From NCBI GenBank assembly GCA_002269645.1, contig NIVC01000176.1:558001-622000 (forward strand): a stretch of 64,000 bases of DNA, given 5' to 3'. Below are positions 1 through 48,879 of this stretch, in pieces (position 1 is the stretch's first letter; every line of letters begins with the position of its first letter). This stretch comes from Macrostomum lignano. Taxonomy: Eukaryota. A model generated the notes under the pieces. The model searched no databases. It was not told the DNA's origin and was given only the letters and a program-made list of their open reading frames with translations. A program made the translations under genes and the position numbers.

Positions 1-195
1 GAGTTTAGGGTCTGTGGAGTTTAGGGTCTGTGAAGTTTAGGGTCTGTGGAGTTTAGGGTCTGTGAAGTTTAGGGTCTGTGGAGTTTAGGGTTTGTGAAGT
101 TTAGGGTCTGTGGAGTTTAAGGGTTTGGGAAGTTTAGGGTCTGTGAAGTTTAAGGGTTTGGGAAGTTTAGGGTCTCTGGAGTTTAAGGGTTTGGA
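1..195. repeat. 16-bp minisatellite (G/A)AGTTTAGGGTCTGTG, contains TTAGGG; truncated by the window edge
   Basis: Direct reading. Confidence 0.9.
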
Positions 196-1472
196 TACTT
201 AATGAAGGTTTACTGTAAATTGTCAGTTTTCGGCACCCAATTGTATAGAACCACCAGTCCAAGTCTCTATAAAAGAGACAGAGATAGAAGTCCCTGACTG
301 TTCGCATTGGGTCTTCTTTTTGTGCAGCGGGCAGAAGGAGCAGCAGGAATCGGATTTCGTTGCATTGTCCTTGTCTTCTGCACAGCTTCATTTGAAGAGA
401 TGGAGAAGAAACTCAAGCAAGTTCAGAAATCATATTTTGGAGGAGAGCAAAGTATCAAATGCCTCCGCTCTTGTTCCAGGCAGTCTGCATTGTCTTCTTT
501 TGCTTCTTGCTTGAACAGTTTTTTCTTCTCCTGGGGGTGGGGGTGGATGCTGCTTTTCAATTTCTTGGGGCCTTGCTCGCGCGAGGAGCCGCAATTCATA
601 GAGATGCTTTTCATCGCGGAAGCAGTTAGGCCTCATTAAGTGGAGATGCTGAGGGGACATTGCTCCCCGCGCGTGCAGATTTGGGATCGGGTTTGTTGTT
701 TTGAGGAAGCTGGGCTTGAGTGGAGAAGGATTCAGCCTCATCATTAGCCAGACAGTTTGAGCTTTGCAACAGATTTTTTTCCTGTCTATAGAAGAAGAAG
801 AACTCAATGGTCGGGCTGCGCGGCAGGCCAAGTGGAAGAAGATTGAAGACTTTCACGGCTACTCACGCACCAGCGCTGCCGCCGCCCGAACTCGAGGAAT
901 CCCAGGCAGCTCAGGGGGGGGGCGGCAATTAATCGCCTTTTAGCTCCCGTCTCTCTCTCTCGATCTCATTTCCAAGAAACAAAGGAAATCCTTCTCTTCC
1001 TTCGTCTCTTCGTTTCTGTTTTTTAAATATAATGGGGGCGGCTTTCTGTTGCCCCTCCCGGGTGTCCTGCTGTGAGGCAAAGGGGAGCTCAATCTGGGGA
1101 AAAAATTAGCTAATCCTCGTTTCCCTGTCCAGGCTCCAGACTGCTTCATCAGGATAGTATGGGGGTATGGAACTCGGAATATTCTTCTTTCAATCGTTTC
1201 TTTCACCGATACACCTGCGGAAGACTTGGATAACGAAGTTAGCCATCAAAGTTCCCAATCCTTCTGAGCAGCCCTTATGCTTCGATTGAGTTTTGAGAAA
1301 TTAATCGCAGAAACAGACGCTTTCCTTCCCCTGCCTGTGCGCTCTGCCGAGCTCTCTCCTGGGAAATTGGTAATTCACATCATGGTGGGGAGAACTCCTA
1401 TTATTCTCCCAGCTGACATTTTATGCCGAATCATGTCCCCCATCCAAAATTCCTAATTGACGATCTCAGCTC

Positions 1473-2007
1473 CCCGATCCCAGATCCCAAATCCCAGATC
1501 CCGAATCCCAGATCCCGAATCCCAGATCCCGAATCCCAGATCCCGAATCCCAGATCCCGAATCCCAGATCCCGAATCCCAGATCCCGAATCCCAGATCCC
1601 GAATCCCAGATCCCGAATCCCAGATCCCGAATCCCAGATCCCGAATCCCAGATCCCGAATCCCAGATCCCGAATCCCAGATCCCGAATCCCAGATCCCGA
1701 ATCCCAGATCCCGAATCCCAGATCCCGAATCCCAGATCCCGAATCCCAGATCCCGAATCCCAGATCCCGAATCCCAGATCCCGAATCCCAGATCCCGAAT
1801 CCCAGATCCCGAATCCCAGATCCCGAATCCCAGATCCCGAATCCCAGATCCCGAATCCCAGATCCCGAATCCCAGATCCCGAATCCCAGATCCCGAATCC
1901 CAGATCCCGAATCCCAGATCCCGAATCCCAGATCCCGAATCCCAGATCCCGAATCCCAGATCCCGAATCCCAGATCCCGAATCCCAGATCCCGAATCCCA
2001 GATCCCA
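1473..2007. repeat. 14-bp minisatellite ATCCCGAATCCCAG, about 38 near-perfect copies upstream of ZF-A
   Basis: Direct reading; gives a 14-aa period in all ORF frames. Confidence 0.97.
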
Positions 2008-2091
2008 TCTAAAAGACTCCGTGTTGAAAGCAGCATGGCGAATTATTTTCACCTCACAGCTCAAGTCAGCGGACCAGAAGCCGCTCAGAAA

Positions 2092-3239
2092 ATGTCAGAA
2101 TCGCCGCCAATGCTATCGGAGTCCGAGATCCTAGCCGGTTGCCATGACGACAACAGCAGCCAGCATCAGCAGTTGTCGGCCAGCTCCAGACGAAAGCTGG
2201 CCAGGCCGCAGAGAAACTCGGCCGAGGACGACGCAGTCGAGAACGAGGAGGCGGCCAAGCGGCCGAGAACGTCCGAGTTTGGGCCGCCACCCAAGCCGCC
2301 GCTCATGCTGCCCTTCTGGGGCCTTCCGCCGCCACAGCCGCAGCCACCGAGTCTTCCAGACTTTCCCCGGCAGAATCCGCTGCGGCAGTCGCCGGAGGCT
2401 CCGCTGGATCTCAGCGTCGGGCACCGTCAGGAAGATGCCGCCGCAGCTCCGCTGGACCTGTCAGCAGCCGAGGACGGCGAGGACGCAGACGACGGCGACG
2501 CCGGTGACATCAAGGCGAGACGCGGCGAGCTGATGAGCCCGGAGACGCTCGCCGCCATCATGCGCGGAGCTGGCCAGGGTCGGCAGCCGCCGCCACCGCC
2601 GCTGCAGTCGCCACAGTCGCTGGAGGAGGCTGTCTCGCAGAGTCCAGCAGCCTCAGGCGCCGCCGCCGCCCCAGCCGTCGTCGACGGCGAAGACGCCGAT
2701 TCGGACGATTTTCGCGACTCAAGCGGCTGCAAAAGCGCCGGCGGCAGAGACATCGGCAACAGCGGCGGCGGCCGCCAGCCGGTGACGTCGTGCCACCAGT
2801 GCCGCCAGACCTTCCTGTGCCTGCGCGACCTGAACGGCCACTTCGAGAAGTCGCATCTGCACTCGCTGATGTCCGAGTTCGACAACACCAAGTCCTGGAA
2901 GTCGTCCGCAGTCGACAACAAGGAGCTCAACGTCGAGGCCACCATGGTGCGGCTGGAGAACGGCGACACGATCGGGTTCAAGTGTCCCGAGTGCGACTAC
3001 TTCGCCAAGTGGCCCACGGAGCTGCAGAAGCACATCATGGTGCACTCCAATGCCCGGCCTCACGTGTGCGTCGTCTGCGGCTGCACCTACAAGTGGAAGT
3101 GGGACCTCGGCAGGCACTTCGACAAGTCGCACGAGTCCGGCGAGATGCCCAACCCGTACAAGAAGAACACGGTTAAGCCCGCGGGTGGCGGCTGTGCCTC
3201 GGTGCAGCCACCTCAGCCGCTGCAGCCGCCGCAGCCTCC

Positions 3240-3273
<34 letters not shown>

Positions 3274-3361
3274 TTTTCTTCCTTTGAGTCGTTGCGTCGC
3301 CACACCGACCTGCTGTTTCCTCCGCAATTCGTGGCCAAGTCGTCAATGTCGCAGCCTCCTC

Positions 3362-3393
<32 letters not shown>

Positions 3394-5505
3394 ATGTCTC
3401 TGCCGCCGCTCCCATCGCTGCCGCCTCCTCCTCCGCAGTCTCTCAAGCGGTCAGTCGGGCCTTCCACGTCGACTTCTTCTTCAACCTCGTCGACTGCCGC
3501 CACTTCTGCCGCTGCCGCCGCCGCTGCTGCCGCCGCCGCCGCCGCCGCCGCGGCCGGCCGCGAGCTGATGGCCTTCTACAGCAGCAGCTGTTTCAGCCAG
3601 ATGGCCCAGCAGCTGGTCTTCGCCAGGCAGCACCCGCTGTTCGGCGCCGCCGCTGCCGCTGCTGCCGCTGCAGCCGCCTCCGGCGGATCCGGGATGCAAC
3701 AGCAGCGGCCCGATGAACTCCTGATGCGAATGCGCCCGGCTCTGCCCCGACCGCCGCCTCCGCCACCGCCGCCGCCACCGGCCTGTACTCGTCCGACCTC
3801 GCTGGGAGGGTCGTTTCCTCCACCGCCGCTACCGCTGCCGCTACCGCCGCCGCCTCCACCGCCGCCGCCGCCTCCGTCGATTTCCCGAGCTCCGACGATG
3901 TCAACCTCGCCGCCGACCCCGACCAACCAGCGGCACCAGGAGATGGCCAAGTCTGGTGGCAGTCGTCGAGTCAATTCAACAACCGCCTCGACAGGCGCCG
4001 GTTCGAAGGACGACGGCTCCGACTCGCTGCCCTACGAGTGCCCGATCTGCGGCGCCAAGGCCCGCTGGAAGTCGGAGCTGAAGTCGCACCTCATCAACCA
4101 CAGCAACTTCAAGCCGTTTCGCTGCAAGTTCTGCAGCTACCGCAGCAAGTGGAAATGGGACGTTGTGAAGCATCTGAAGCGCTGCACCGGCAAGAGGGCC
4201 GCGCTGGGCTGCGCCGGCTGCGACAGCACCGACATGGACTGCGGCGCCGGCTGCGGCAGTAACAAGGAGATCCAAGCGTTTGTGCTGTACGATCCGCCAG
4301 ACCCCGAGCTCTACAGTAACGAGGCTGAGGCCATCCTGTATGCGGATGACACCGTGCCGGTGAGGCAGCAGCCGCACAGTCAGCAGCATCGCCAAAGATG
4401 CTCAAGCGAAGAACCCGACGACTTGGAAGATGTAAGTGTAAATTTCTGGTCTCGGATCCCAACTCCCTTAGATCCCAAATTCCCAGATCCCAAAATCTCC
4501 AGATTCAAAATCCCAGATCCCGAATCCCCAAATCCCAAATTCCAAATCCCAAATCCCAAATCCCAAATCCCAAATCCCAAATCCCAAATCCCAAATCCCA
4601 AATCCCAAATCCCAAATCCCAAATCTTCAAAATCCCAACTTACCAGATCCCAACTCTCCAAATCCCAACTCCCAATATCCCAACCCCCCAAATCTCAAAA
4701 ACCCTTAGATCAGAAATCTCTTAGATCCCAAATTCCTTTAGATTTCTAATCTCCAGATTCCAACTCCTCAGATCCCAAATGCCTTAAATCCCAAATCCCC
4801 AGATCCGAACTCCCAAGATCCCAGCTCCCCAGATCTCAAATCCCCAGATCCCAAATCCCCAGATCCCAAATCCCCAGATCCCAAATCCCCAGATCTCAAA
4901 TCCCCAGATCCCAAATCTCCAGATCCCAAATCCCCAGATCCCAAATCCCCAGATCCCAAATCCCCAGATCCCAAATCCCCAGATCCCAAATCCCCAGATC
5001 CCAAATCCCCAGATCCCAAATCCCCAGATCCTAAATCCCCAGATCTCAAATCCCCAGATCTCAAATCCCCAGATCCCAAATCCCCAGATCCCAAATCCCC
5101 AGATCCCAAATCCCCAGATCCCAAATCCCCAGATCCCAAATCCCCAGATCCCAAATCCCCAGATCCCAAATCCCCAGATCCCAAATCCCCAGATCCCAAA
5201 TCCCCAGATCCCAAATCCCCAGATCCCAAATCCCCAGATCCCAAATCCCCAGATCCCAAATCCCCAGATCCCAAATCCCAACTCGCACAGAGAACACCCC
5301 CCAACTGTTGCAGTACCGCCAGTCTCCAACAGCTGCCGTCTCCGCTCTGCCAACTGCGGGTGTCGCCGCCACAAAGCTCCGCCTGCTGCCGTGCAGCCAG
5401 TGCGGCCACATCGCCAAGACCGGCGCCGACCTCGCCAGCCACGTCCAGCTGGTGCACCGCGGCGAGCCACAGCCGGCCTGCAAGCTGAACGAAGGCGTGG
5501 CCTGA
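2092..5505 (+). CDS. C2H2 zinc-finger transcription factor ZF-A, join(2092..4431,5314..5505), about 843 aa; alternative in-frame ATG at 2035
   Basis: Fingers CHQC..HFEKSH, CPEC..HIMVH, CVVC..HFDKSH, CPIC..HLINH, CKFC..HLKRC (C2HC) and CSQC..HVQLVH. Two PLDLS CtBP-type motifs (2401-2415, 2449-2463) and poly-Q/P/A tracts. Donor GAT|GTAAGT at 4432 and acceptor TTGCAG| at 5313 are both phase 0; a second phase-0 donor CCG|GTGAGG at 4360 is possible. Acceptor TTTTCACCTCACAG at 2059 lies 32 nt before the ATG. The 1108-aa ORF in the track reads through repeat DNA at both ends. Confidence 0.88.
4460..5280. repeat. ZF-A intron: 7-bp AATCCCA array (about 4460-4760) followed by a 15-bp AGATCCCAAATCCCC array (about 4780-5280)
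   Basis: Direct reading. Confidence 0.95.
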
Positions 5506-5659
5506 GTTCGAATCCGAGAAAAACTCCAAAACTGAATTTGTATCACTGATCACTGCGTCTTATATGTCTGTATAGGCGACATTTAGATGGATTCTTGTAA
5601 ATTCTGATTTGTCTGATCAACTGCTTCTATTCATTGATCTACTCTCCTCCCGTTAAATC

Positions 5660-6030
5660 CCAATCCTAGATCCCATTCTCTGAATACCAATCCTAGATCC
5701 CAATCCTAGATCCCAATCCTAGATCTCAATCCCAGATCTCAATCCCAGATCCCAATCCTAGATCCCAATCCAAGATCCCAATCCAAGATCCCAATCCAAG
5801 ATCCCAATCCAAGATCCCAATCCAAGATCCCAATCCAAGATCCCAGTTTTTTAATCCCAACCCTAGATCCCAGTTTTTAATCCCCATCCTATATCCCACT
5901 TTTTGAATCCCAATCCTATATCCCAGTTTTGAATCCCAATCCTAGATCCCAGTTTTTTAATCCCAATCCTAGATCCCAGTTTTTAATCCCAATCCTAGAT
6001 CCCAGTTTCTGAATCCCAATCCTAAATCCT
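5660..6030. repeat. 13-bp GATCCCAATCC(T/A)A array and longer derivatives, 3' of ZF-A
   Basis: Direct reading. Confidence 0.9.
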
Positions 6031-6489
6031 AAACCTCACTGCGAACTCTATAAGAGCCGTGATCCGTCATATTTACTTCGCAGCACAGTGTGTTTGAAAT
6101 CTATAAAATGCATATTTCCTAAACATTGTTCTGACTGATTTTTAAATATTTGATAGCTTAACTGATTCATTCATTTACTCACTAATCCAAAGGCCTGTTA
6201 TGATATATTGCATCAAATTCCAACCATAATTATTGTACCTTACCTTAATGAAGTTTACGCTTGCAAATATGCCGTTTTAATTTGCTATAGTGTACACACA
6301 CCCCGACATTAGAATTTATATTAGGCTCTTAGTTTTTTTCAACTGCTGCTGCTGCAGCAACCAAAGTTAAAATTGTGGTTTTCTGTGTTGTCTCAGTCTT
6401 TATTACGAAATTAAATATAATCTAGAAATGTCTAGAAACTTGTGTTGATCTCAAATTTAAATTTGTTAATTACATACAGGCTTTAATAG

Positions 6490-7782
6490 GTAAGGTTTGA
6501 GAAGACAGGCTTGAGAAGACAGGCTTGATAGGACAGGCTTGAGAAGACAAGTTTGAGAAGACAGGTTTGTGAAGACAGGCTTGAGAAGACAGATTTGAGA
6601 ATATAGGTTTGAGAAGACGTGTTTGAGAAGACAGGTTTGAGAAGACAGGTTTGAGAAGACAGGCTTGAGAAGACAGGTTTGAGAAGACAGGTTTGAGCAG
6701 ACAGGCTTGAGAAGACAGGTTTGAGAAGACAGGTTTGAGAAGACAGGTTTGAGCAGACAGGCTTGAGAAGACAGGTTTGAGAAGACAGGTTTGAGCAGAC
6801 AGGCTTGAGAAGACAGGTTTGAGAACACAGGTTTGAGCAGACAGGCTTAAGAAGACAGATTTGAGCAGACAGGCTTGAGAAGACAGGTTTGAGCAGACAA
6901 GTTTGAGAAGACAGGTTTGTGAAGACAGGCTTGAGAAGACAGATTTGAGAATATAGGTTTGAGAAGACGTGTTTGAGAAGACAGGTTTGAGAAGACAGGT
7001 TTGAGAAGACAGGCTTGAGAAGACAGGTTTGAGCAGACAGGCTTGAGAAGACAGGTTTGAGAAGACAGGTTTGAGAAGACAGGTTTGAGCAGACAGGCTT
7101 GAGAAGACAGGTTTGAGAAGACAGGTTTGAGCAGACAGGCTTGAGAAGACAGGTTTGAGAACACAGGTTTGAGCAGACAGGCTTAAGAAGACAGATTTGA
7201 GCAGACAGGCTTGAGAAGACAGGTTTGAGCAGACAAGTTTGAGAAGACAGGTTTGAGAAGACAGGTTTGAGAAGACAGGCTTGAGAAGACAGGTTTGAGA
7301 AGACAGGTTTGAGCAGACAGGCTTGAGAAGACAGGTTTGAGAACACAGGTTTGAGCAGACAGGCTTAAGAAGACAGGTTTGAGCAGACAGGTTTGAGAAG
7401 ACAGGTTTGAGAAGACAGGTTTGAGCAGACAAGTTTGGGAAGACAGGTTTGAGAAGACAGGCTTGAGAAGACAGGCTTGAGAAGACAGGTTTGAGCAGAC
7501 AGATTTGAGCAGACAAGTTTGAGAAGACAGGTTTGAGAAGACAGGTTTGAGCAGACAAGTTTGAGAAGACAGGTTTGAGAAGACAGGTTTGAGAAGACAG
7601 GCTTGAGAAGACAGGTTTGATAAGACAGGTTTGAGCAGACAGGCTTGAGAAGACAGGTTTGAGAACACAGGTTTGAGCAGACAGGCTTAAGAAGACAGGT
7701 TTGAGCAGACAGGCTTGACAAGACAGGTTTGAGCAGACAAGTTTGAGAAGACAGGTTTGATAGGACAGGTTTGAGAAGACAG
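6490..7782. repeat. 14-bp ACAGGTTTGAGAAG minisatellite between the convergent ZF genes
   Basis: Direct reading; a variant block recurs 350 bp apart. Confidence 0.97.
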
Positions 7783-8366
7783 GGTAAAATGAAAAACTCG
7801 CTGTAGACATAATTTTAAGTGTTTTAAGTATTTTTATATTTTAACAGACAGGAAACGATATGCAAGCAAAATTATTCTACGAAAAAAGCAAATTCTACGA
7901 ATATATGACAGGATTAAATACGAGTTATTAGAAAGCGATAGCGCAGCAGGATTTTGCTGCGAAAAATATTGTCCAAAGTTCGATGCATATTCTGACTTGG
8001 ATCTGACGAAACTGATTAAAACAGAAATCACAAAACTCTAAAAAATAATAATACGAAACGCCCTAACGACCTATGGGTAGCCAGCACTTTTTTGTTTGTT
8101 TTCTTTTATAAGCAAATATAAAAATCTAATCATACTACTGATTGAATAGAAAAGTAGAAAAGTAAGCACGTGCGCGTCTAAAAATGAAACGCAGAGAAGA
8201 GAAAAATGATAAAATCAGTAAAATACAACAAAATAAAGCCGGGGATAAGGGAATAACTGAAAATAAGCCATGAGTAATTTATTAATTACCCATTCACAAG
8301 AAAATTTAAGCATGTCAGCAGCAGGTATAATTATTATACTATGCAGGTATAATAGTATCAAATAAG

Positions 8367-11300
8367 TCACTCCACGGCGGCGGTGGCGGCGGCTGCCTTT
8401 GATGTCCCTGACGGCAACTGGGTAGGTGAGGCCTGGGCCAGCGACGGGCGACCGACTCGGGACTGAGTCGACTCACTGCCGGAGCTTCCAGCGCCGGAAC
8501 CGTTGAGGATGCGCTGTGGATTGGGAAGTAAAGTGAGGATTTTTATTGATATCTTTTTAAGCGATTGATAGGATTGTTAACCGTAGTGATTTATGGGATC
8601 AGAGAGATCAGTGGGATCAGAGGGACTTATGGGATCAGCGGGATCAGAGAGACTTGTGGGATCAGAGGGACTTATGTGATCAGAGGGACTTATGGGATCA
8701 GCGGGATCAGAGGGACTTGTGGGATCAGAGGGACTTATGGGATCAGAGGGAATTGTGGGATCAGAGGGATTTATGGGATCAGTGGGATCAGAGGGACTTA
8801 TGGGATCAGCGGGATCAGAGGGACTTGTGGGATCAGAGGGACTTGTGGGATCAGAGGGACTTGTGGGATCAGAGGGACTTGTGAGATCAGAGGGACTTGT
8901 GGGATCAGCGGGACTTGTGAGATAGAGGGATTTATGGGATCAGTGGGATCAGAGGGACTTGTGGGATCAGCGGGACTTGTGGGATCAGAAGGACTTGTGG
9001 GATCAGGACTTGTGGGATCAGGACTTGTGGGATCAGAGGGACTTGTGGGATCAGAGGGAATATGGGATCAGAGGGACTTGTGGGATCAGAGGGACTTGTG
9101 GGATCAGAAGGACTTGTGGGATCAGGACTTGTGGGATCAGGACTTGTGGGATCAGAGGGACTTGTGGGATCAGAGGGAATATGGGATCAGAGGGACTTGT
9201 GGGATCAGAGGGAATATGGGATCAGAGGGACTTGTGGGATCAGAGGGAATATGGGATCAGCTGTGGGATCAGTGGGATTTGTGGGATCTGTGGGATCAGT
9301 GGGATTTGTTGGATCTGAGGATCAGCATGACTTGCGGGACCAGAGGTATCGATGATATTTCCAGTTAACTCACAAAACCTACAGGATTAAAAACCTGAAA
9401 AGCAGTTTCCCGAATCCCAGCTCACCCGCTCAGCACCCGAGCCTGACGATGATGCCGACACTGTAGGAGCGGAGCGCCTCGAGCTCTTTGAAGTGCCGCC
9501 GCTTCCGCTGCCGCTGCTGCCTCCGCTGCCGCGGTCTCCGGCGTACAGCAGAACCTCAGCCTCGTTGCTGAACAGCTCTGGATCCGGAGGGTCATAAATC
9601 ACGTCGTCTCTCCTCGAGCCGTCAGCTGTGTCGGCTTCGATGTCGGCAGCTCGCTTAGCCGGACAGCGTTTCAGATGCTTCACAACGTCCCAGCGCCACT
9701 TGCTGCGGTAGGGACAAAATCCGCATCTGTACGGCTTGAAGTTGCTGTGGTTCACCAGGTGCGACTTCAGCTCCGACTTCCACCGGGCCTTGGCGCCGCA
9801 GATCGGGCAGGTGAACGGCCAGCTGGTGGCGCTGCTCTGGGGCGTCGACTCGTTGTTATTCGGCGTTTGCAGCGGCTGCTGTTGATTGTTCTTAATCGGT
9901 TGATGAGGCTCGAGAGACTGCGGAGGAGGAGGCTGGTGAGGAGTCTCGAAGCCGTCACGACGCTGAGGCTGCCACTGGGGGATTGAGGTGGGATAGGCGG
10001 ATTTCAAATGCATTTCTAAATCATATCTCAAATTCAGATCCCATGTTCCTGATCCCACAGTTTGCGATCCCACATCCCCATCTCACACTTTGATCCCATA
10101 TCTTATCTCACACTCTGATCCCATATCCCATCTCACACTCTGATCCCATATCCCATCTCACACTCTGATCCCATATCCCATCTCACACTCTGATCCCATA
10201 TCCCCAATCTCACACTCTGATCCCATATCCCCATCTCACACTCTGATCCCATATCCCCAATCTCACACTCTGATCCCATATCCCATCTCACACTCTGATC
10301 CCATATCCCCATCTCACACTCTGATCCCATATCCCCAATCTCACATTCTGATCCCATATCCCCATCTCACACTCTGATCCCATATCCCCAATCTCACACT
10401 CTGATCCCATATCCCCAATCTCACACTCTGATCCCATATCCCATTTCACACTCTGATCCTATATCCCTATCTCACACTCTGATCCCATATCCCCAATCTC
10501 ACACTCTGATCCCATATCCCCAATCTCACATTCTGATCCCATATCCCCATCTCACACTCTGATCCCATATCCCCATCTCACATTCTGATCCCAAATCTCA
10601 CATTCTGATCCCAAATCTCACATTCTGATCCCATCTCATACTAAAATCCCATATCCCATCTCCTATTCTGATCCAATATCCCCATCTCACACACTGATCC
10701 CATATCCCTATCTCACACTCTTATCCCATATCATTATCTTAAACTCTGATCCCATATCCCCATCTCACACTCTTATCCCATATCCCCATCTTACACTCTG
10801 ATCCCATATCCCCAATCTCACATTCTGATCCCATATCCCCATCTCACATTCTGATCCCAAATCTCACATTCTGATCCCATCTCATACTCTAATCCCATAT
10901 CCCATCTCCTATTTTGATCCAATATCCCCATCTCACACACTGATCCCATATCCCATCTCACACTCTGATCCCATATCCCATCTCACACACTGATCCCATA
11001 TCTCAATTCTAATCTATGCATATTCCATCCTAGACTCTATCTTGATTATTTTTCCTTAATTTTCGGGCTAGGATTTCACTCGCCTACTACTAGTAGGAGA
11101 AAAGTATTGTCAATATTTTTTCCGCATTCACACACGCAATTTAAAAAACGCAATTTTAAAAGAATGCTGCTAATTTATTTCTATCGCAGACAATGGGCTT
11201 AGAAACAGGGACCAAGGAAGTTATTGCTCAATACAAATGGTCTCATTATCAAACCTTGACTGACTTACTTTGAGCAATTAATTCTTTAATTAGCTGCTAA

Positions 11301-12823
11301 TTGGGCCGCCTCGTGGCGAGCAACTCTCCACCCACTCCATTTCCTGTAATGCTAATCGGCCTTACATCCTATCTGTGTTCTCCCCCTCTTTACCCTCTGG
11401 GTTCTCCCCCTCTTTTCCCTCAGTATACTCCCTCTCATTCCCCTCTGCTTACTCCTGTCTTATATTATTCCCTAAATCCCCATTTGAAAAGTACAAAACT
11501 TACCTCATAGCTGTCGAGCAGTGCAAACTGAGCTCCTCCCGGAATCTCAGGCTCCTCAGCCGCTGCCGCAGGCAAACTCACAGCGGGCTTAACCGTGTTC
11601 TTCTTGTACGGGTTGGGCATCTCGCCGGACTCGTGCGACTTGTCGAAGTGCCTGCCGAGGTCCCACTTCCACTTGTAGGTGCAGCCGCAGACGACGCACA
11701 CGTGAGGCCGGGCATTGGAGTGCACCATGATGTGCTTCTGCAGCTCCGTGGGCCACTTGGCGAAGTAGTCGCACTCGGGACACTTGAACCCGATCGTGTC
11801 GCCGTTCTCCAGCCGCACCATGGTGGCCTCGACGTTGAGCTCCTTGTTGTCGACTGCGGACGACTTCCAGGACTTGGTGTTGTCGAACTCGGACATCAGC
11901 GAGTGCAGATGCGACTTCTCGAAGTGGCCGTTCAGGTCGCGCAGGCACAAGAAGGTCTGGCGGCACTGGTGGCACGACGTCACCGGCTGGCGGCCGCCGC
12001 CGCCGCTGAAGTCGCAGGAGCTTCGGTCGTCGTCGACTTCGTCTCGAACTTCGGCGGCGGCAGTCGAGCTAGCAAGAATTCGTCCGGGCAGTCGAAGGTC
12101 CAACGGAGCGTCGGACTCTTCGGCGGCGGCTGCAGCGGCGGGTCGCTTTGAAGTGCCGTTGCCGAGGGAGAAGTCGGCCTCGGCGCCAGCTGATGGCACT
12201 CGCTTCACCGGTCGGAAACTCTGCATTGGCGGCGGTGGAAGCGGCGGTGGCGGCGGCGGCAGCGGTGGGAGAGGCGCGTTCTCGAGGCCGGCAGCCGCAG
12301 CCCGGTCGGGAAGCCAAGACCGCCATGGCGGAGGCTGCAGCGGCGAAGTTTGATGCTGATGCTGCTGATGATGAAGTGGCGTCAAACGAAGTGGAGTTGG
12401 CTTCCTGAGAACTCCTGAGTGCTGCGACTGTGGCTGCTCGGTTCGGCCTGATCGGATTAAGAGTCGGTAGTCGGTTTTATCATAACTAATTAATCTATTA
12501 TTAATCCCTTCTCTCGCCTCCCCTGGCCCTTGAGTTGAGGGATAGATTCTATCGTGTGTAAAAGTTATTAAACCATGCAAGCAACACTTACCAGAGAACG
12601 AACTGCCGCCGCTGCCACTCAGCAGTCGGTGATACTCCTGAAGCCCAGCTGCGGTAGGCTGATAGTTTAACTGCCGATTTAAACAGTTTTGAAGCGCGGG
12701 TCGGCTAGTTAAACTGTTTAAATAATAGGATGAAGATTGGGATTCTGTGTCGGCTTCGGCTGCGGCGGCGGCTGCGGTGGCGGCTGCTGTCAGATATGAA
12801 TAGTAAATCTGATGATGGTGCAT
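8367..12823 (-). CDS. C2H2 zinc-finger transcription factor ZF-B, paralog of ZF-A, complement(join(8367..8513,9426..9974,11504..12447,12592..12823)), about 623 aa
   Basis: Same first five fingers as ZF-A and a PLDLR motif (12092-12106). All introns are GT-AG with consistent phases (1,0,0). Last exon encodes RILNGSG...AAVE and stops at TGA 8367-8369. Confidence 0.88.
8590..9330. repeat. 18-bp GGGATCAGAGGGACTTGT array in ZF-B intron 3
   Basis: Direct reading. Confidence 0.95.
10070..11000. repeat. 25-27-bp TCTGATCCCATATCCC(C)ATCTCACAC array in ZF-B intron 2
   Basis: Direct reading. Confidence 0.95.
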
Positions 12824-12852
12824 TGCTTCGCTTTGCTTTCTGCTTGATATAA

Positions 12853-13003
12853 CTAAATAGAATTTACTGAAGTCTTAATGATGTATGTATGTATATATAA
12901 TACCAGTGAGAGGGGGTTGTTGATTAGATTCACTGCCAACTCTCGAAGCAATCTCATTGGCTGGCGATCGGCGGGGGGCTGGTGATAGAACGCCCGCCAT
13001 TGG
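12853..13003 (-). promoter_or_regulatory. Putative ZF-B 5' region: 51-nt 5'UTR intron (12853-12903) and two CCAAT boxes (12956-12960, 12999-13003) with an adjacent GC-box-like element
   Basis: On the minus strand: CACTG|GTATT donor, TCTATTTAG| acceptor 29 nt before the ATG, and CCAAT twice 130-180 nt upstream. Motif match only. Confidence 0.35.
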
Positions 13004-13374
13004 TCCTTGTGGGTTGGCTTTTCAATTTGACGAAAATCACCTCACCTACCTACGTGTTTGAAGTGTCTCGGGAGTTTAGGAAGTCTGAGCCTGCGGGATG
13101 TCAGAATTGCGAGTCCTATGTGACGATTTATTATTTTTCGAATTGGCAGATTTTCTATTGTGTTCTTATGGATTGCTTTTGTAGAAATTCCCTGATCAAA
13201 TTCCCTAAACTCTCTGGCAAAAGTCAAAAGAACTTCTGAGGGAGGGTTCAACAGCTCAAGACTCTGGAATGGTTGCTAAAAAGTTGCGCTTGACGCTTCA
13301 AGTTTACAGGGGGCGCCAGCAATCTTTTATAGAAGTAGCGCGAAAGAAACAACAAGAAAGGGCGGAGGGGTCAG

Positions 13375-13970
13375 GGGCGAAAGGATCGGGGCGGAAGGAT
13401 CGGTGGCGGAAGGATCGGGGGCGGAAGGATCGGGGGCGGAAGATCGGGGCCGGGAGGATCGGGGCGGGAGGATCGGGGCCGGGAGGATCGGGGTGGAAGG
13501 ATCGGGGGCGGAAGGATCTGCGGCGGAATGATCGGGGGCGGAGGATCGGGGGCGGAAGGATCGGGGCGGAAGGATCGGGGGCGGAATGATCGGGGGCGGA
13601 AGGATCGGGGGCGGAATGATCGGGGGCGGAATGGTCGGGGGCGGAATGATCGGGGGCGGAAGGATCGGGGCGGAAGGATCGGGGGCGGAAGGATCGGGGC
13701 GGGAGGATCGGGGGCGGAAGGATCGGGGGCGGAAGGATCGGGGGCGGAATGATCGGGGGCGGAAGGATCGGGGCGGAATGATCGGGGGCGGAATGATCGG
13801 GGGCGGAAGGATCGGGGCGGAAGGATCGGGGGCGGAAGGATCGGGGCGGAAGGATCGGGGGCGGAAGGATCGGGTGCGGAAGATCGGGGCCGGGAGGATC
13901 GGGGGCGGGAGGATCGGGGGCGGAAGGATCGGGGGCGGAAGGATCGGGGCGGAAGGATCGGGGGCGGAAG
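13375..13970. repeat. 14-15-bp GGATCGGGGGCGGAA array
   Basis: Direct reading. Confidence 0.95.
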
Positions 13971-14974
13971 GAGCGCCAAAATCCAGAAAAATTATTTAGT
14001 TTGGTTACACACACTAATTTACAGATTATTATTGGTATTACGCTCGTAATAGACTTAGATAATAACTTAGTATGACAAGTTTGCAAGTAAGTATAAGTAA
14101 GGTCTGCAAATTAAATTTTATAACACAATTGGTTACAAATTTTATTACACTATAATATTATATTAAAGTTGAATTTTGAAGACATCGAGCCTCCCCCCCG
14201 CCGAGCCCCGCGCAGATCAAGACGACTTTTTATGGCCAACGGCCCCCTATACACTTAACACAGGCAGCCAGAGATCAGCATGGATACTGATATTCATCAA
14301 TTGATAAGAAGAAATGTTTGATAAGAATTAAATGCGCCTTTGAACTTCAAGACTTTATAACAGACTTATTAGTTTTATTGCATATACTCTAGTATAGATA
14401 GGTTGTTTAATGAAAATATAAATTGAACTAACTATATAGTATGCATAGTGGTTTACAAGTGCCTGAAATTTTTTGGTATGCAATTAATTATTTTAACCCC
14501 TAACTAATACTAGGCCTACAGACTAGGGGTTGCGTGTCGGATTTACAGAGAGAGAATAGCTTAGTTACTCATTATGTTGCCTATAGTAATATATAGTTTC
14601 TATACTATACCTCAGTTCAGTCAGTCATGCTCTCACTGTCTGCCTCAATAACTAGGCTAATGAATAGCTCTTATACCTTCATCATACATAGATAGTTTAA
14701 TCTAAGATTCTGCAGTAAGGGACGAAGGTGTCAGCTCGTCTGCCAGTCTGTCACCTTCTTCATAGCATGGCAACTATAAGAGAAATCGCTTCTAAAATGT
14801 GAAATCCTGATTCCTTATAAGCCATTATAAGCATTGGGTGTGAAGTTATACTTTACACTTTCAATTCAAAGTGAATTCATGCACTCGAGTCACTCGGGCA
14901 GGCGGTGGGCGTTGAAGTTTTCATTTGAAGTCACTTCTCTCCTTTTCTCGCTTGAGTATGCGGCGACCGGGACC

Positions 14975-15330
14975 GGGGGCGGAAGGATCAGGGGCGGAAG
15001 GATCGGGGGCGGAAGGATCTGCGGCGTAAGGATCCGGGGCGGAAGGATCGGGGGCGGAAGGACCAGTGGGCTGAAGGATCGGGGGGCGGAAGGTTCAGTG
15101 GGCGGAAGGATCGGGGGGCGGAAGGACCAGTGGGCGGAAGGATCGGGGCGGAGGATCGGGGGCGGAAGGATCGGGGGGCGGAAGGACCAGTGGGCGGAAA
15201 GATCGGGGGGCGGAAGGACCATTGGGCGGAAGGATCGGGGGGCGGAAGGACCAGTGGGCGGAAAGATCGGGGGGCGGAAGGACCATTGGGCGGAAGGATC
15301 GGGGGGCGGAAGGACCAGTGGGCGGAAGGA
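14975..15330. repeat. Second array of the GGATCGGGGGCGGAA family with GGACCAGTGGGCGGAA variants
   Basis: Direct reading. Confidence 0.92.
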
Positions 15331-15872
15331 CTTGGATGCAGCTGCCCATGGCCATGGTGAGTGGTGACTCATTGATCAATGCAAAGAATCTCAATAGTTT
15401 TTCACTTGAAGCAGCCAGCAGGGTTTGTCTTGCAGGTGTTTCTCCCATCCTGACCCCGAGAGTCGAGAGTGACCTTTTTACGTTCGTATTATACGATAAA
15501 CCACGAGGTCCCATTGCGAGGTGGTTTATAGTTTGTGTTAAGAAACACCCGCCAGGGCCATGGAAACTCAGTCAAGTCAATGCAAATTCCTTTATCCGTG
15601 CTTTTTAAAGAACTTAATTTGAAATCGAATCAGTTCTTTGCTTGCAGGGCCGTCTGTGAGCTTTGTTTGAGTTTGTTTTCCCCATTGTGAAAGGCGTCCA
15701 CTTCTTCATCATTTTCCAATATGCAACGCTCAAGCTCAACCCGATGTATAGCAGAATAAATAAAAGTTTCAATGTCAATTGAAGACTTTGGCATGCTTTG
15801 TGTTTTAACAGGCCTTGCTTGTGCAGTCAGGCCTGCAACATCTGCATGGTGTGGCTTAAATTGGAATTTAAT

Positions 15873-16762
<890 letters not shown>

Positions 16763-17399: not shown

Positions 17400-18290
17400 A
17401 TTTTTTAGAAAGATCCCAACTCCTCTAGAGAGATCCCAAAAACTCTCAAATTCTCTAGAGAGATCCCAAAAATCCCAAATCTTCTAGATAGATCCCGAAA
17501 GCTCCCAAATCCTCCAGAGAGATCTTAAAAACCCCAAATCCTCTAGACAGATCCCGAAAACTCTCAAATCCTCGATAGAGATCCCAAAAAACTCCCAAAT
17601 CCTCTAGAGAGATCCCGAAAACCCCAAATCCTCTAGAGAGATCCCGAAAACCCCAAATCCTCTAGAGAGATCCCGAAAATCCCAAATCATCTAGAGAGAT
17701 CCCGAAAAACTCCCAAATCCTCTAGAGAGATCCCGAAAACCCCAAATCCTCTAGAGAGATCCCGAAAATCCCAAATCCTCTAGAGAGATCCCGAAAATCC
17801 CAAATCCTCTAGAGAGATCCCGAAAACCCCAAATCCTCTAGAGAGATCCCGAAAACCCCAAATCCTCTAGAGAGATCCCGAAAATCCCAAATCCTCTAGA
17901 GAGATCCCGAAAATCCCTAATCCTCTAGAGAGATCCCGAAAATCCCTAATCCTCTAGAGAGATCCCGAAAATCCCTAAACCTCTAGAGAGATCCCGAAAA
18001 TCCCTAAACCTCTAGAGAGATCCCGAAAATCCCTAATCCTCTAGAGAGATCCCGAAAATCCCTAAACCTCTAGAGAGATCCCGAAAATCCCAAATCCTCT
18101 AGAGAGATCCCGAAAACCCCAAATCCTCTAGAGAGATCCCGAAAACCCCAAATCCTCTAGAGAGATCCCGAAAATCCCAAATCCTCTAGAGAGATCCCGA
18201 AAGCTCCCAAATCCTCTAGAGAGATCCCGAAAACTCCCAAATCCTCTAGAGAGATCCCGAAAACTCCCAAATCCTCTAGAGAGATCCCAG
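17400..18290. repeat. About 30-bp AGAGATCCCGAAAATCCCAAATCCTCTAG array
   Basis: Direct reading. Confidence 0.95.
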
Positions 18291-25660: not shown

Positions 25661-28600
25661 CTACAGCTCCTGCTTGCCGGGAGACTTCTTCGGATTGCCG
25701 GACCTGTCGAATCCATCCAACTCATCAGTAGCCTCCCTAGCCAGGTAGTTAATGAAATCTTTGACCTCCCGGCCGCCCTCGTAGGCTCTGGGATTGGCCT
25801 TGTCGTTGCGAGGTGCAAAGTAGATCGTTGGGAAGCCGCGCACCGAGTAGGGCTGCGGCACATCGTTGGCGGTGGCGTCCATCTTGGCGATGACGATTCC
25901 AGACTCCTTGGCCAGTTTCTGGGCCAGCTCCTCATATTTCGGCGCCAAACTCTTGCAGTGGCCGCACCAGGGGGCGTAGAATTCGATCAGGACGTCCTTG
26001 GCGGGGTCGTTGACCAGCGAGTCGAAGTTGTTGGCCACCACCACCTTGACGGGGTCGGGCTGGGACTCTGGCACCGGCTCCGACTTCAGGTAGGGGGTGA
26101 GCCGGTCCGCCAGGAAGTCGTGCAAGAACGAGTCGAATGTCTCCATGCTGGGAGGGGAGGGCAGTGGGGATTTTCAGCTTGGCAGACAGTTTATAGGAAT
26201 CATAGGCCCAAGACGGAAAGCTCAGATCGAAGGATACGGGAGGCTGGCGGTGGCCCAGCAACTGAGGATCTGGGAGGCTGGCACAGCAACTGAAGATCTG
26301 GGAGGCTGGCACAGCAACTGAGGATCTGGGAGGCTGGCTCAGCAACTGAGGATCTGGGAGGCTGGCCCAGCAACTGAGGATTTGGGAGGCTGGCCCAGCA
26401 ACTGAGGATCTGGGAGGCTGGCACAGCAACTGAGGATCTGGGAGGCTGGCCCAGCAACTGAAGATCTGGGAGGCTGGCCCAGCAACTGAGGATCTGGGAG
26501 GCTGGCCCAGCAACTGGGGATCTGGGAGGCTGGTTCAGCAACTGAGGATGTGGGAGGCTGGCCCAGCAACTGAGGATCTGGAAGGCTGGCCCAGCAACTG
26601 AGGATCTGGGATGCTGGCCCAGCAACTGAGGATCTGGGAGGCTGGCCCAGCAACTGGGGATCTGGGAGGCTGGTTCAGCAACTGAGGATCTGGGAGGCTG
26701 GCCCAGCAACTGAGGATCTTGGAGGCTGGCACAGCAACTGAGGATCTGGGAGGCTGGCAACAAAGCATGAGAAGTGCAGACATGACTCATCCAAGCCTAA
26801 CGGAAGCGGATCAGAGGTCATTACCTGAACTCCTCGGCCATAACAAACTTGCGCCCCTTGGCGTCCCTAATCGTCACCAGCACTTTCTGCTCGTCGGGGG
26901 TCTGGACGCCGAATTCGGCCAGCTCCTGCCGCATCGATTCGGCGTTGGCGATGCAGAATCTCAAGCCGGAGGCTGCGTGCTTTTTAGCAATCTTCATCAG
27001 GCGATTACGCCAATAATTGGTGCCCTTGGCGTTGCGCTGATAGTCCACCGAGTAATAGGCGGTCACCAGGGGGAGGCCGCCAACATTGAAGTGCTTGCTG
27101 TTCGATGCCGTGCGCTGCCCGGCCAGGCCGAAGCTGATGATTTGAGGGGGGGGGGGCGGAGTGACGGCGGAGTTAGGGGCGGATTTTTAACAAATTGAGG
27201 TGGATATATAATAATTTGGGGCGGATTAGCAATAAATTGGGGGAGCGGATTTGTTATAAACTAAAGGCGGATTTGCAATAAATTGGGAGCGGATTTGCAA
27301 TAAATTGGGGGCGGATTTGCAATGAATAGGGGCGGATTTGCAATAAATTGGGGGCGGATGTGCAATAAATTGGGGGGCGGATTTGCAATAAATTGGGGGC
27401 GGATTTGCAATAAATTGGGGGGCGGATTTGCAATAAATTGGGGGGGCGGATTTGCAATAAATTAGAGGCGGATTTGCAATAAATTGGAGGCGGATTTGCA
27501 ATAAATTGGGGGGCGGATTTGCAATAAATTGGGGGCGGATTTGCAATAAATTGGGGGAGCGGATTTCTTATAAACTAAAGGCGGATTTGCAATAAATTGG
27601 GGGCGGATTTGCAATAAATTGGGCGCGGATTTGCAATGAATAGGGGCGGATTTTTTGTAAACTTGGGGGCGGATTTGCAATGAATAGGGGCGGATTTGCA
27701 ATAAATTGGGGGCGGATTTGCAATAAATTGGGGGGCGGATTTGCAATAAATTGGGGCGGATTTGCAATAAATTGGGGGGCGGATTTGCAATAAATTGGGG
27801 GCGGATTTGCAATAAATTGGGGGCGGATTTGCAATAAATTGGGGGGGGGGCGGATTTGCAATAAATTGGGGGCGGATTTGCAATAAATTGGAGGCGGATT
27901 TGCAATAAATTGGGGGGCGGATTTGCAATAAATTGGGGGGCGGATTTGCAATAAATTGGAGGCGGATTTGCAATAAATTGGGGGGCGGATTTGCAATAAA
28001 TTGGGGGCGGATTTGCAATAAATTGGGGGAGCGGATTTCTTATAAACTAAAGGCGGATTTGCAATAAATTGGGGGCGGATTTGCAATAAATTGGGCGCGG
28101 ATTTGCAATGAATAGGGGCGGATTTTTTGTAAACTTGGGGGCGGATCTTTTGTCAACATGGGGTGGATTAGCGATAAATTGGGGGCGGATTTGCAATAAA
28201 TTGGAGCGGATTTTGAGTAATTAAAGACGGATTTTTTCTTAATTGGGGAGGCAGATTTGCAGCAAAATTGGGGGCGGATTTGTAACAAATTACGGGTGGA
28301 TTTGCGAAAAATTTTGGGCAGATTCGTAACTTAATGATGGGGCAGATTTTAGTGCCGATTTTTCGAAATATTTAGAGATTAGTTAATAGCGGATTAATAA
28401 GTTATCTAAGAGCAAATCCAGCCATACAAAATGGACACCAGCCCATTCAGCTCACATGTTAGCTCCAATCCAATGCTTAAGCGTCTCGGCGTCCATGGAG
28501 CCGGCGTAGGCTTCGGTGTCCGGCTCGAATTTGCTGCGCAGCTTGCGCGGCCGGACAACGGCGATGCTGTCCGCTTCGAAGCCGTGGCGAGCGTTCAACT

Positions 28601-36600: not shown

Positions 36601-37482
36601 AGATGAGAGATGGGAGAGATGGAGGAGATGAAGATGAGATGGAGATGGGAGAGATGGAGGAGATGAAGATGAGAGATGGAGATGGAAGAGATGGAGGAGA
36701 TGAAGATGAGAGATGGAGATGGGAGAGATGGAGGAGATGAAGATGAGAGATGGGAGAGATGGAGGAGATGAAGATGAGATGGAGATGGGAGAGATGGAGG
36801 AGATGAAGATGAGAGATGGAGATGGGAGAGATGGAGGAGATGAAGATGAGAGATGGGAGAGATGGAGGAGATGAAGATGAGATGGAGATGGGAAAGATGG
36901 AGGAGATGAAGATGAGAGATGGAGATGGAAGAGATGGAGGAGATGAAGATGAGAGATGGAGATGGGAGATATGAAGGAGATGAAGCTGAGATGGAGATAG
37001 GAGATATGGAGGAGATGAAGATGAGATGGAGATAGGAGAGATGGAGGAGATGAAGATGAGATGGAGATGGGAGAGAAAGATGGAAGAGATGAAGATGAGA
37101 GATGGAGATGAGAGAGATAGAAGAGATAGAAGATGGAGATGAGAGATGGAAGAGCTGGAAATGGATGGATATGAAAGAGATGGATCCAGTCAACAAGCCA
37201 GGACAAGCAGGCACGCACCTGTCCATCCCTAGTGATCTGGCAGTCCAGCTCCAGCATGTGGGTGCGGTGCTGACTGACAGCCGCTTCAAACGCTTCCATG
37301 GTGTTCTCAGCGAGTTCGGCCGCTCCGCCTCGGTGGCTGATGTGTGCGGCGGCGAAATGTCGACGCTTTCGCCGATGAAGCAGAGTCGGATAGCGCAGCA
37401 GCAGGCCAGACAGCAGAGTGTAGGCGGACAGGGCCGCGGCGGCCGCGACTGCGACTGATGGCGACTGAAACTCCTGCGGCAT
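33637..37482 (-). CDS. GDPD1: Glycerophosphodiester phosphodiesterase / lysophospholipase D (GDPD1/GDPD3-like), complement(join(33637..33795,34089..34452,35969..36240,37219..37482)), 352 aa
   Basis: HISHRGGAAELAENTMEAF, MLELDCQITRDGQVVVAHD, NIDIKE, TVVWGN, GLLPFVPI, GVPTYVWVLN and GVMTDRP motifs. Phases are consistent. GDPD1 cannot be told from GDPD3 here. Confidence 0.92.
33855..34042. repeat. 22-bp GGATTCCCAAATATCCCAATTT array in GDPD intron 3
   Basis: Direct reading. Confidence 0.92.
34470..35510. repeat. 20-24-bp GGAGTTCAGCAGGTGCTCAGGGAG array in GDPD intron 2
   Basis: Direct reading. Confidence 0.95.
35542..35883 (+). mobile_element. Dispersed repeat: about 170-bp upstream module plus a tRNA-derived SINE-like unit (A box TAGCCCAGTGG at 35751)
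   Basis: Aligns by eye to 46792-47237. Degenerate B box GGCTCGATTTCC and shared tail CACAGTGAAGTGTACATGCCTAA. Confidence 0.65.
36530..37170. repeat. GA-rich compound array (GAGATG/GAGGAGATGAAGAT) in GDPD intron 1
   Basis: Direct reading. Confidence 0.93.
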
Positions 37483-48705: not shown

Positions 48706-48879
48706 GCAAAAAGTTTTTTTTACAAATCGAGTTAGATCAATACAGGTAGGATTTACAAAATCAAACGAGGAATGAGATCGAGTGCTAAGGAGGATCATCT
48801 CTAAAGTAGGTGGCACTGGCATCTAACATCAGAGATAGATTTAAGACTCAAAGGTAAGAATTAGGATGACGTCATGAGT

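What the first reader, a model, noticed from the sequence alone, without database searches (positions are those of the whole stretch)
2764..12001. 419-bp near-identical coding tract shared by two otherwise diverged, inverted ZF paralogs (local gene conversion)
Seen: 2764-3182 (+) equals the reverse complement of 11583-12001 except for one synonymous change (CTG/TTG, 2815 vs 11950). The tract covers fingers 1-3 and the spacer between them, about 139 codons. In contrast the second finger cluster (4039-4185 vs 9663-9809) differs at 20 of 147 nt, including 7 synonymously changed codons, and the linkers and termini do not align. Identity ends abruptly on both sides. Protein-level selection cannot keep third positions identical. 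Inference: recent or recurrent ectopic gene conversion between the arms of an inverted duplication is homogenising one DNA-binding module while the rest of the two proteins diverges.
Basis: partly seen in the sequence, partly recalled or inferred. Interest (0 to 1): 0.8.

Follow-up and report, generated by a model that had tools for sequence, protein, structure and literature searches.

The report
Gene conversion between inverted zinc-finger paralogs
Two old, tail-to-tail duplicate zinc-finger transcription-factor genes of a Macrostomum flatworm share a 421-bp stretch, encoding their first three zinc fingers, that is identical but for one base; this is a clean but ordinary case of one gene copy repeatedly overwriting part of the other (gene conversion).

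Summary
Window 2762-3182 (+) equals the reverse complement of 11583-12003 at 420 of 421 bases. The one difference is a synonymous CTG/TTG at 2815/11950, and identity drops to random on both sides. The tract lies inside two convergent C2H2 zinc-finger genes: A (+ strand, 837 aa) and B (- strand, 624 or 598 aa). It encodes fingers 1-3.

Synonymous divergence in the tract is 0.011. In fingers 4-5 it is at least 0.74, and in the C-terminal motif it is saturated. Linkers and termini do not align at the DNA level. Codon bias cannot explain the identity (P <= 1e-20), nor can random placement of the differences (P ~ 1e-16). No RNA family or unusual RNA fold was found.

The tract coincides with the protein block conserved across flatworms. 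This fits conversion being confined to the only remaining island of homology.

The window is from Macrostomum lignano or a sibling species, shown by synteny with an M. lignano contig. That contig ends before the ZF genes, and no Macrostomum ortholog could be retrieved. The species-versus-paralog tree and a read-level check therefore remain undone.

This is a new example of a well-known process, mosaic concerted evolution of inverted neighbouring paralogs. Interest is modest.

The parts
2762..3182 (+). Converted tract, copy in gene A. It encodes GGRQPVTS + finger 1 + spacer + fingers 2-3 + ...[11 protein letters not shown].
11583..12003 (-). Converted tract, copy in gene B, 420/421 identical to the A copy.
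2815..2815 (+). The only difference in the tract: C in A against T at 11950 in B (sense strand). CTG/TTG, both Leu.
2110..4431 (+). Gene A, large exon (start ATG 2110 is provisional). It carries two PLDLS motifs (2401-2415, 2449-2463), fingers 1-3, a long P/A/Q-rich linker, fingers 4-5 (4039-4185) and the YDPPDPEL motif. A GTAAGT donor lies at 4432.
5314..5505 (+). Gene A, last exon (acceptor ttgcag|). It has a sixth C2H2-like finger at 5392-5457 and the stop TGA at 5503-5505. B has no counterpart.
12592..12823 (-). Gene B, exon 1 (ATG at 12823, GTAAGT donor at 12591).
11504..12447 (-). Gene B, exon 2. It carries a PLDLR motif (12106-12092) and fingers 1-3. Two in-phase donors are possible: GTAAGT at 11503, or GTGAGT at 11581, which is 1 nt beyond the end of the tract.
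9426..9974 (-). Gene B, exon 3: fingers 4-5 (9809-9663) and the YDPPDPEL motif (9596-9534).
8367..8513 (-). Gene B, last exon, with the stop at 8369-8367 and no zinc finger.
4039..4203 (+). Fingers 4-5 of A, the diverged comparison block (partner 9645-9809). 28/165 nt differ, dS 0.74, dN 0.10. The first 78 nt are 95% identical, which may be an older eroded conversion.
4288..4350 (+). C-terminal motif of A (partner 9534-9596). 17/63 nt differ and pS is 0.87.
3183..11582 (.). The 8.4-kb interval between the two tract copies. It holds the 3' halves of both genes, four minisatellite arrays, and 2.9 kb between the two stop codons. A crossover inside the tract would invert this segment.
   Evidence: the inversion itself is inference

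Best explanation
Genes A and B are old, convergently oriented (3' ends facing) tandem-inverted paralogs encoding C2H2 zinc-finger transcription factors with CtBP-type PLDLS motifs. They sit in a Macrostomum (flatworm) genome. A 421-bp segment encoding fingers 1-3 has been copied from one gene into the other by non-crossover homologous repair, that is, interlocus gene conversion. The likely route is a break in one copy repaired from the inverted copy 8.4 kb away on the same chromatid or the sister chromatid. The transfer cannot extend beyond the tract because the flanks no longer share homology: the linkers have diverged through low-complexity expansion, and an intron may lie next to the tract in B. 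Purifying selection on the DNA-binding fingers slows divergence there. That keeps the segment a good recombination substrate, so conversion has probably recurred since the duplication (mosaic concerted evolution). The shorter second finger cluster, whose longest identical run is 26 nt, has escaped. Shown here: the identity, its statistical excess, the age of the rest of the genes, and the match between the tract and the conserved domain. Inferred: the repair mechanism, recurrence, and the role of selection.
For: The tract is 420/421 identical with sharp edges. dS is 0.011 in the tract against at least 0.74 and saturation in the other alignable coding blocks. The codon-usage null gives 70-105 expected identical codons of 139, with P(all identical) between 1e-20 and 1e-48. 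The clean-run test gives P ~ 1e-16. Only two copies exist in the window. The genes are collinear full-length paralogs: PLDL motif, fingers 1-3, fingers 4-5 and YDPPDPEL in the same order. The tract boundaries match the block conserved across flatworm orthologs, GG(K/R)QPVT...NPYKK(N). In fingers 4-5, same-amino-acid codon identity is 35/45 (78%), about the 75% expected from codon bias alone, so the duplication is old. A 421-bp tract falls within published ranges for interlocus conversion tracts, and adjacent inverted pairs are known to convert (PMC3966223; PMC2720389; PMC4824203).
Against: Only one genome sequence was available, so there is no read-level confirmation that both copies exist as assembled. 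There is no ortholog from a close relative, so the phylogenetic signature (tracts grouping by species) is untested. With a single difference, the timing is poorly resolved. The window and a syntenic M. lignano contig differ at 2 of 354 nt in a PDI exon, so the last conversion is of the same order of age as that split and not demonstrably younger. Recurrence is an inference from how hard it would be to start conversion between sequences about 17% diverged.
Confidence: 0.85

Rival explanations
1. Assembly or polishing artefact: the real copies differ, and one was overwritten by reads from the other, or a repeat was collapsed and re-expanded.
For: The genome is very repeat-rich; about 40% of the window is tandem repeats. 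The related public M. lignano contig carries a homopolymer indel in a coding exon, so errors do occur in such assemblies. No reads were available to check.
Against: Each copy sits in-frame in its own unique, non-alignable flanks. One genuine difference is retained. Short reads would cross-map only if the copies were already nearly identical; the other conserved block is only 83% identical. It is not a palindromic chimera, because the arms differ in exon structure and sequence everywhere else.
Confidence: 0.06
2. A one-off structural event instead of conversion between homologous segments. For example, a mobile or shuffled zinc-finger module inserted recently into two otherwise unrelated genes, or a partial duplication pasted into B.
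For: The edges are abrupt, and a CAG precedes the tract in both genes (with a CGG-repeat length difference). A GTGAGT follows the tract by 1 nt in B, so it could in principle be a discrete exon-like unit.
Against: Both genes share ordered homology outside the tract: PLDL motif plus acidic stretch upstream, and fingers 4-5 plus the C-terminal motif downstream. The ancestral gene therefore already had fingers 1-3 at this position. Flatworm orthologs have the same domain in a single protein, and P0128 has both clusters in one protein. There are no extra copies or transposon features in the window. The reading frames stay open and GC-rich through both edges.
Confidence: 0.04
3. Nucleotide-level functional constraint keeps both copies identical without any exchange. 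Candidates are an embedded RNA element, overlapping reading frames, or dense splicing signals.
For: Long alternative-frame and antisense ORFs cross the tract: 2790-3176 (+), 2719-3327 (-), 11375-12151 (+).
Against: There is no Rfam match. The tract RNA is less stable than its shuffles (z = +1.3). The extra ORFs are an automatic by-product of GC3 = 0.96, because stop codons need A or T at positions that are almost always G or C (reasoning). The nearest ortholog is only 77% identical in DNA over the best 194 nt. Constraint has never been known to hold 88 synonymous sites at 1 difference while a neighbouring equally conserved finger pair is saturated.
Confidence: 0.02

Closest known systems
Mosaic concerted evolution of mammalian gene pairs (BMP8A/B, DDX19A/B, TUBG1/2; also TLR1/TLR6 and EMR2/CD97) - PMC2720389
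   Same: Only part of each paralog is homogenised by gene conversion (>97% identity) while the rest diverges. BMP8A/B are in inverted orientation. The regions evolving in concert have lower dN/dS, so conversion and purifying selection act on the same sites.
   Different: In those pairs the homogenised segments did not clearly coincide with known domains, and persistence over 100 My was shown with many species. Here the tract coincides with a defined DNA-binding domain, the copies are 8.4 kb apart, and persistence is untested.
Human RHD/RHCE (PMC4824203 and works cited there)
   Same: Two paralogs with 3' ends facing each other and a short spacer. Frequent gene conversion between them blurs orthology and paralogy.
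   Different: RH copies are young and similar along their whole length (about 30-kb spacer, multi-exon tracts). Here the genes are old and only one 421-bp island still converts.
Caenorhabditis adjacent inverted pairs (hsp16 modules, hsp70-7/-8) and fog-2/ftr-1 - PMC3966223
   Same: Conversion between neighbouring paralogs in head-to-head or tail-to-tail orientation. Tract lengths run from tens to a few thousand bp, and frequency falls with divergence.
   Different: Most surviving tracts reported there are 50-200 nt. This one is 421 nt and ends where alignable homology ends.
Arm-to-arm conversion in large palindromes (e.g. primate Y-chromosome palindromes; from my own knowledge, not checked here)
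   Same: Intrachromosomal conversion between inverted repeats keeps the arms near-identical.
   Different: Palindrome arms are near-identical over their whole length, non-coding DNA included. Here everything except 421 bp has diverged beyond DNA alignment.

Membership tests
Interlocus (ectopic) gene conversion / concerted evolution | Two paralogous loci in one genome share a tract of identity significantly longer than the divergence of the rest of the alignment predicts (GENECONV-type criterion). | tested here: met
   367-nt clean run and 420/421 identity. Bound 1e-16; 0 of 200,000 permutations reached it.
Interlocus (ectopic) gene conversion / concerted evolution | Synonymous sites are homogenised beyond what protein-level selection and codon bias can produce. 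| tested here: met
   dS 0.011 against at least 0.74. Codon-usage null P <= 1e-20. Fisher p = 2e-10.
Interlocus (ectopic) gene conversion / concerted evolution | Phylogenetic incongruence: the tract groups by species, the flanks by paralog. | not testable with these tools
   No Macrostomum ortholog of A or B is in the protein collection. The exact-ORF look-up was empty. The syntenic M. lignano contig ends before the genes.
Interlocus (ectopic) gene conversion / concerted evolution | Both copies are physically real (reads anchored in unique flanks). | not testable with these tools
   No reads were available.
Palindrome with arm-to-arm conversion, or palindromic assembly chimera | Inverted arms near-identical along their whole length, non-coding sequence included. 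| tested here: not met
   Identity is random outside 2762-3182. The only other alignable piece is 87% identical over 146 nt.
Classical C2H2 zinc-finger DNA-binding proteins | C-x2-C-x12-H-x3-5-H/C fingers matching Pfam C2H2 models above the curated threshold. | tested here: met
   PF13909 zf-H2C2_5 scores 56.6 bits (cut-off 27) in A and 36.9 bits in B. Finger patterns were located. PDB sequence hits are ZNF568, CTCF and PRDM9 fingers.
REST/NRSF-like (and Drosophila Charlatan-like) repressors | Match to the REST-like finger model above threshold, or orthology to REST/Charlatan. | tested here: inconclusive
   PF24540 zf-C2H2_REST scores 24.9 bits against a cut-off of 27. The resemblance to Charlatan (two finger clusters, KWKWD fingers, CtBP motif) is a recollection and was not tested.
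CtBP-recruiting repressors | A PxDLS-type motif is present. | tested here: met
   A has PLDLS twice (2401-2415, 2449-2463). B has PLDLR (12106-12092). Binding to CtBP was not tested.
Hairpin-RNA (endo-siRNA) locus | Both arms of the inverted repeat lie in one transcript, and small RNAs map to the arms. | not testable with these tools
   No RNA data. The arms lie in two convergent genes whose stop codons are 2.9 kb apart, so a common transcript would need more than 6 kb of read-through.

The most novel reading that the evidence does not exclude
The perfectly matched inverted tract may be more than a passive product of conversion: it may be a working recombination substrate. Because it sits at the same position and in the same frame in both convergent genes, a crossover inside it would invert the 8.4-kb interval. 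That would reciprocally swap the 3' halves, giving N-terminus(A)-fingers 1-3-C-terminus(B) and N-terminus(B)-fingers 1-3-C-terminus(A), both in frame. Such an inversion could segregate as a polymorphism, or flip recurrently, and so shuffle regulatory or N-terminal contexts against different C-terminal finger sets (A has a sixth finger; B has none). A second, less likely reading: read-through transcription makes a 421-bp hairpin that feeds small-RNA autoregulation of both genes.
Probability: 0.1. Interest if true: 0.55.

Novelty: new member of a known kind. Interest (0 to 1): 0.3.

Why it matters
This is a textbook-clean example of domain-restricted concerted evolution. It appears in a flatworm used as a model for regeneration and sex allocation, whose genome is hard to assemble and partly polyploid.

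In practice it warns that trees, dN/dS tests and ortholog assignment for this gene pair will be misled if the tract is included. It also means that the two transcription factors must share identical fingers 1-3, and hence probably target sites, while differing in partner-binding and C-terminal parts.

It also gives a convenient natural marker for measuring ectopic conversion, and possibly inversion, in Macrostomum lines. It does not reveal a new mechanism.

Tried and rejected
1. Retrieving orthologs for the species-versus-paralog tree. The tract query found only distant flatworm proteins at 63-77% identity. A composite query of the A- and B-specific parts found one distant protein. The exact look-up of the B ORF found nothing. 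The syntenic M. lignano contig NIVC01002644.1 stops about 6 kb past the PDI gene, short of the ZF genes.

2. RNA-element explanation. There was no Rfam hit in 1-16000, and the fold z-score is +1.3. Rejected.

3. Dual-coding explanation from the long alternative-frame and antisense ORFs. Rejected as a by-product of GC3 0.96.

4. Repeat or transposon origin. Only two copies exist in the window. Rejected.

5. Dating the conversion against the window-versus-M. lignano divergence. I first thought the conversion was far younger than that split. However, the PDI exon differs at only 2/354 nt, so the two ages are of the same order and no claim is made. The 89% protein identity of the PDI hit comes from a 1-nt homopolymer indel, not from divergence.

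6. Naming the family as Charlatan/REST. Only a sub-threshold Pfam REST-finger hit was found. Literature searches gave nothing usable for a sequence test. Left as an untested lead.

7. GC-biased conversion signature. GC3 is 0.96 in the tract against 0.93 and 0.80 in fingers 4-5 and 0.80 over A as a whole. The direction fits, but the blocks are too short for any claim.
Full report
**1. The observation**

The repeat finder reports an inverted repeat with arms at 2757-3182 and 11583-12008, 99% complementary and 8.4 kb apart. A base-by-base comparison shows uninterrupted pairing of 2762-3182 with the reverse complement of 11583-12003. The single mismatch is at 2815/11950, and matching is at random level directly outside both ends. 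BLAST of the tract against the window finds only these two copies. blastn-short between the two arms finds nothing else alignable apart from that cluster and two short low-complexity matches.

**2. What the tract sits in**

Both copies are in frame in protein-coding sequence. Splice signals and reading frames give two convergent genes.

- Gene A (+ strand): exons 2110-4431 and 5314-5505, 837 aa.
- Gene B (- strand): exons 12823-12592, 12447-11504, 9974-9426 and 8513-8367, 624 aa.
- B has an alternative in-phase donor, GTGAGT at 11581, which would give 598 aa.
- The two stop codons are 2.9 kb apart.

Both proteins share the same order of parts: a PLDLS/PLDLR (CtBP-type) motif and an acidic stretch, three C2H2 fingers (the tract), a linker, two more fingers, and a YDPPDPEL(Y/F)SNEAE motif. 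A has a long P/A/Q-rich linker and a sixth finger in its last exon. B has neither. Pfam assigns zf-H2C2_5 above threshold, while the REST-like finger model falls just below its cut-off. PDB sequence matches are generic DNA-binding C2H2 arrays. These gene models rest on sequence signals only, and A's start codon is provisional.

**3. Organism**

- The best matches to the tract are flatworm proteins (Protopolystoma, Echinostoma and unnamed assemblies) at 63-77% identity.
- A PDI exon in the window (25664-26146) hits Macrostomum lignano BOX15_Mlig001024g3.
- The M. lignano contig NIVC01002644.1 is syntenic with window 23.4-36.5 kb (GDPD-PDI order). Non-coding DNA there is 87-97% identical.
- The PDI exon differs at 2 of 354 nt, plus a 1-nt homopolymer indel in the M. 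lignano contig.

The window is therefore from M. lignano (another haplotype, homeolog or assembly) or a sibling species. That contig ends before the ZF genes.

**4. Is the identity more than selection and codon bias?**

| Block | Result |
|---|---|
| Tract, 139 codons | 1 of 88 synonymous sites differ; dS 0.011, dN 0 |
| Fingers 4-5, 55 codons | dS 0.74, dN 0.10 |
| C-terminal motif | pS 0.87 (saturated) |

Codon bias is strong (GC3 0.96 in the tract), so I modelled two independent draws from the codon usage. The model expects 70 identical codons of 139 under usage from outside the tract, and 105 under the tract's own usage. The probability that all are identical is 1e-48 to 1e-20.

In fingers 4-5, 35 of 45 same-amino-acid codons are identical. 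That is about the 75% expected from bias alone, so the block is effectively saturated and the duplication is old. In the tract the figure is 130 of 131 (Fisher p = 2e-10). A GENECONV-style test asks how likely the 367-nt clean run is when 46 differences are placed at random on 649 alignable nt. The bound is 1e-16, and no permutation in 200,000 reached it.

**5. Rivals tested**

- *RNA element.* There was no Rfam family in 1-16000. The tract RNA folds no better than shuffled sequence (z = +1.3).
- *Overlapping frames.* The long alternative-frame and antisense ORFs across the tract follow automatically from G/C at almost every third position.
- *Deep nucleotide conservation.* The nearest ortholog (L001, from an unnamed sequencing run) is only 77% identical in DNA over the best 194 nt.
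- *Mobile module.* This is contradicted by the ordered homology on both sides of the tract and by orthologs carrying the same domain.
- *Palindromic assembly chimera.* This is excluded because the arms differ everywhere else.
- *Polishing artefact.* It cannot be excluded without reads. It is unlikely, because each copy has unique flanks and short reads would cross-map only between copies that are already near-identical.

**6. Why the tract ends where it does**

Aligned with flatworm orthologs, the conserved protein block begins at GG(K/R)QPVT, 8 codons before finger 1. It ends at NPYKK(N). The tract starts at exactly that point and ends 5 codons after NPYKKN.

At the 5' edge there is a (CGG)3 versus (CGG)4 length difference. 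At the 3' edge B has a possible GTGAGT donor 1 nt beyond the tract, whereas A continues into its low-complexity linker. The tract is thus the only island where the two genes still share enough homology for strand exchange.

Fingers 4-5 are shorter (165 nt) and their longest identical run is 26 nt. Their first 78 nt are 95% identical against 72% for the rest (Fisher p = 0.03, binomial p = 0.04). This is a weak hint of an older, eroded conversion.

**7. Mechanism**

Shown: the identity, its statistical excess, the great age of the rest of the pair, and the match with the conserved domain.

Inferred:
- A break in one copy is repaired by synthesis-dependent strand annealing from the inverted copy 8.4 kb away, with a non-crossover outcome.
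- Purifying selection on the fingers slows divergence and keeps the substrate convertible, so conversion recurs. One-off conversion between copies about 17% diverged would be strongly disfavoured.

A corollary follows. A crossover in the tract would invert 3183-11582 and swap the 3' halves of the two genes in frame.

**8. Comparison with what is known**

- Domain- or segment-restricted homogenisation in otherwise diverging pairs is documented for BMP8A/B (inverted), DDX19A/B, TUBG1/2, TLR1/6 and EMR2/CD97 (PMC2720389).
- Conversion between adjacent inverted paralogs, and tract lengths from tens to thousands of bp, are documented in Caenorhabditis (PMC3966223).
- RHD/RHCE are a tail-to-tail pair with frequent conversion (PMC4824203).

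The present case is a new instance of this known kind. It is not a palindrome in the Y-chromosome sense, because the arms are diverged apart from the tract.

**9. Verdict**

It is a new member of a known kind, with interest of about 0.3. The two decisive tests, long reads and cross-species trees, could not be run with the data reachable here.

Noticed in passing
window 1-64000 (arrays listed): About 40% of the window is minisatellite or tandem-repeat arrays with 10-60-nt units, mostly in introns and between genes. Many give long spurious ORFs.
   Followed up: partly
window 1473-2006, 4455-5281, 5657-6029, 8588-9350, 10066-11002, 17408-18288, 42486-43326: Different arrays share a GATCCC/GGGATC core. 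The array in A's intron after the finger 4-5 exon (4455-5281) and the array in B's corresponding intron (8588-9350) carry the core in mirror orientation. This suggests that the ancient inverted duplication already included an intronic array.
   Followed up: partly
window 11576-11581 and 11498-11503 (- strand): Gene B has two in-phase 5' splice sites after the tract (GTGAGT and GTAAGT). They predict isoforms differing by 26 aa. The first lies 1 nt past the end of the identity.
   Followed up: partly
window 5392-5457 (+): Gene A's last exon encodes an extra C2H2-like finger ([22 protein letters not shown]) that has no counterpart in B. Pfam did not score it.
   Followed up: partly
window 4039-4116 vs 9732-9809: Finger 4 is 95% identical in DNA (74/78) while finger 5 is 72% identical. 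This may be an older, eroded conversion tract, but the significance is marginal (p = 0.03-0.04).
   Followed up: yes
L003 about 10360 (M. lignano NIVC01002644.1) vs window about 25790: The M. lignano contig has CC where the window has CCC in the last PDI exon. This frameshifts the annotated 'partial' protein BOX15_Mlig001024g3. It is either an assembly indel or a decaying duplicate.
   Followed up: partly
window 25661-26146 (-), 37150-37620 (-), 39745-40227 (-), 48073-48822 (-), 56921-57655 (-): Neighbouring genes are PDI (thioredoxin domain, KQEL end), GDPD, a DnaJ-domain protein, a DUF1168 protein and an RCC1-repeat protein. The GDPD-PDI order is shared with M. lignano.
   Followed up: partly
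window 3423-3445 vs 9913-9935: Both linkers contain the same short coding stretch, CCTCCTCCTCCGCAGTCTCTC (PPPPQSL). This is a further collinear landmark between the paralogs, seen by eye.
   Followed up: no
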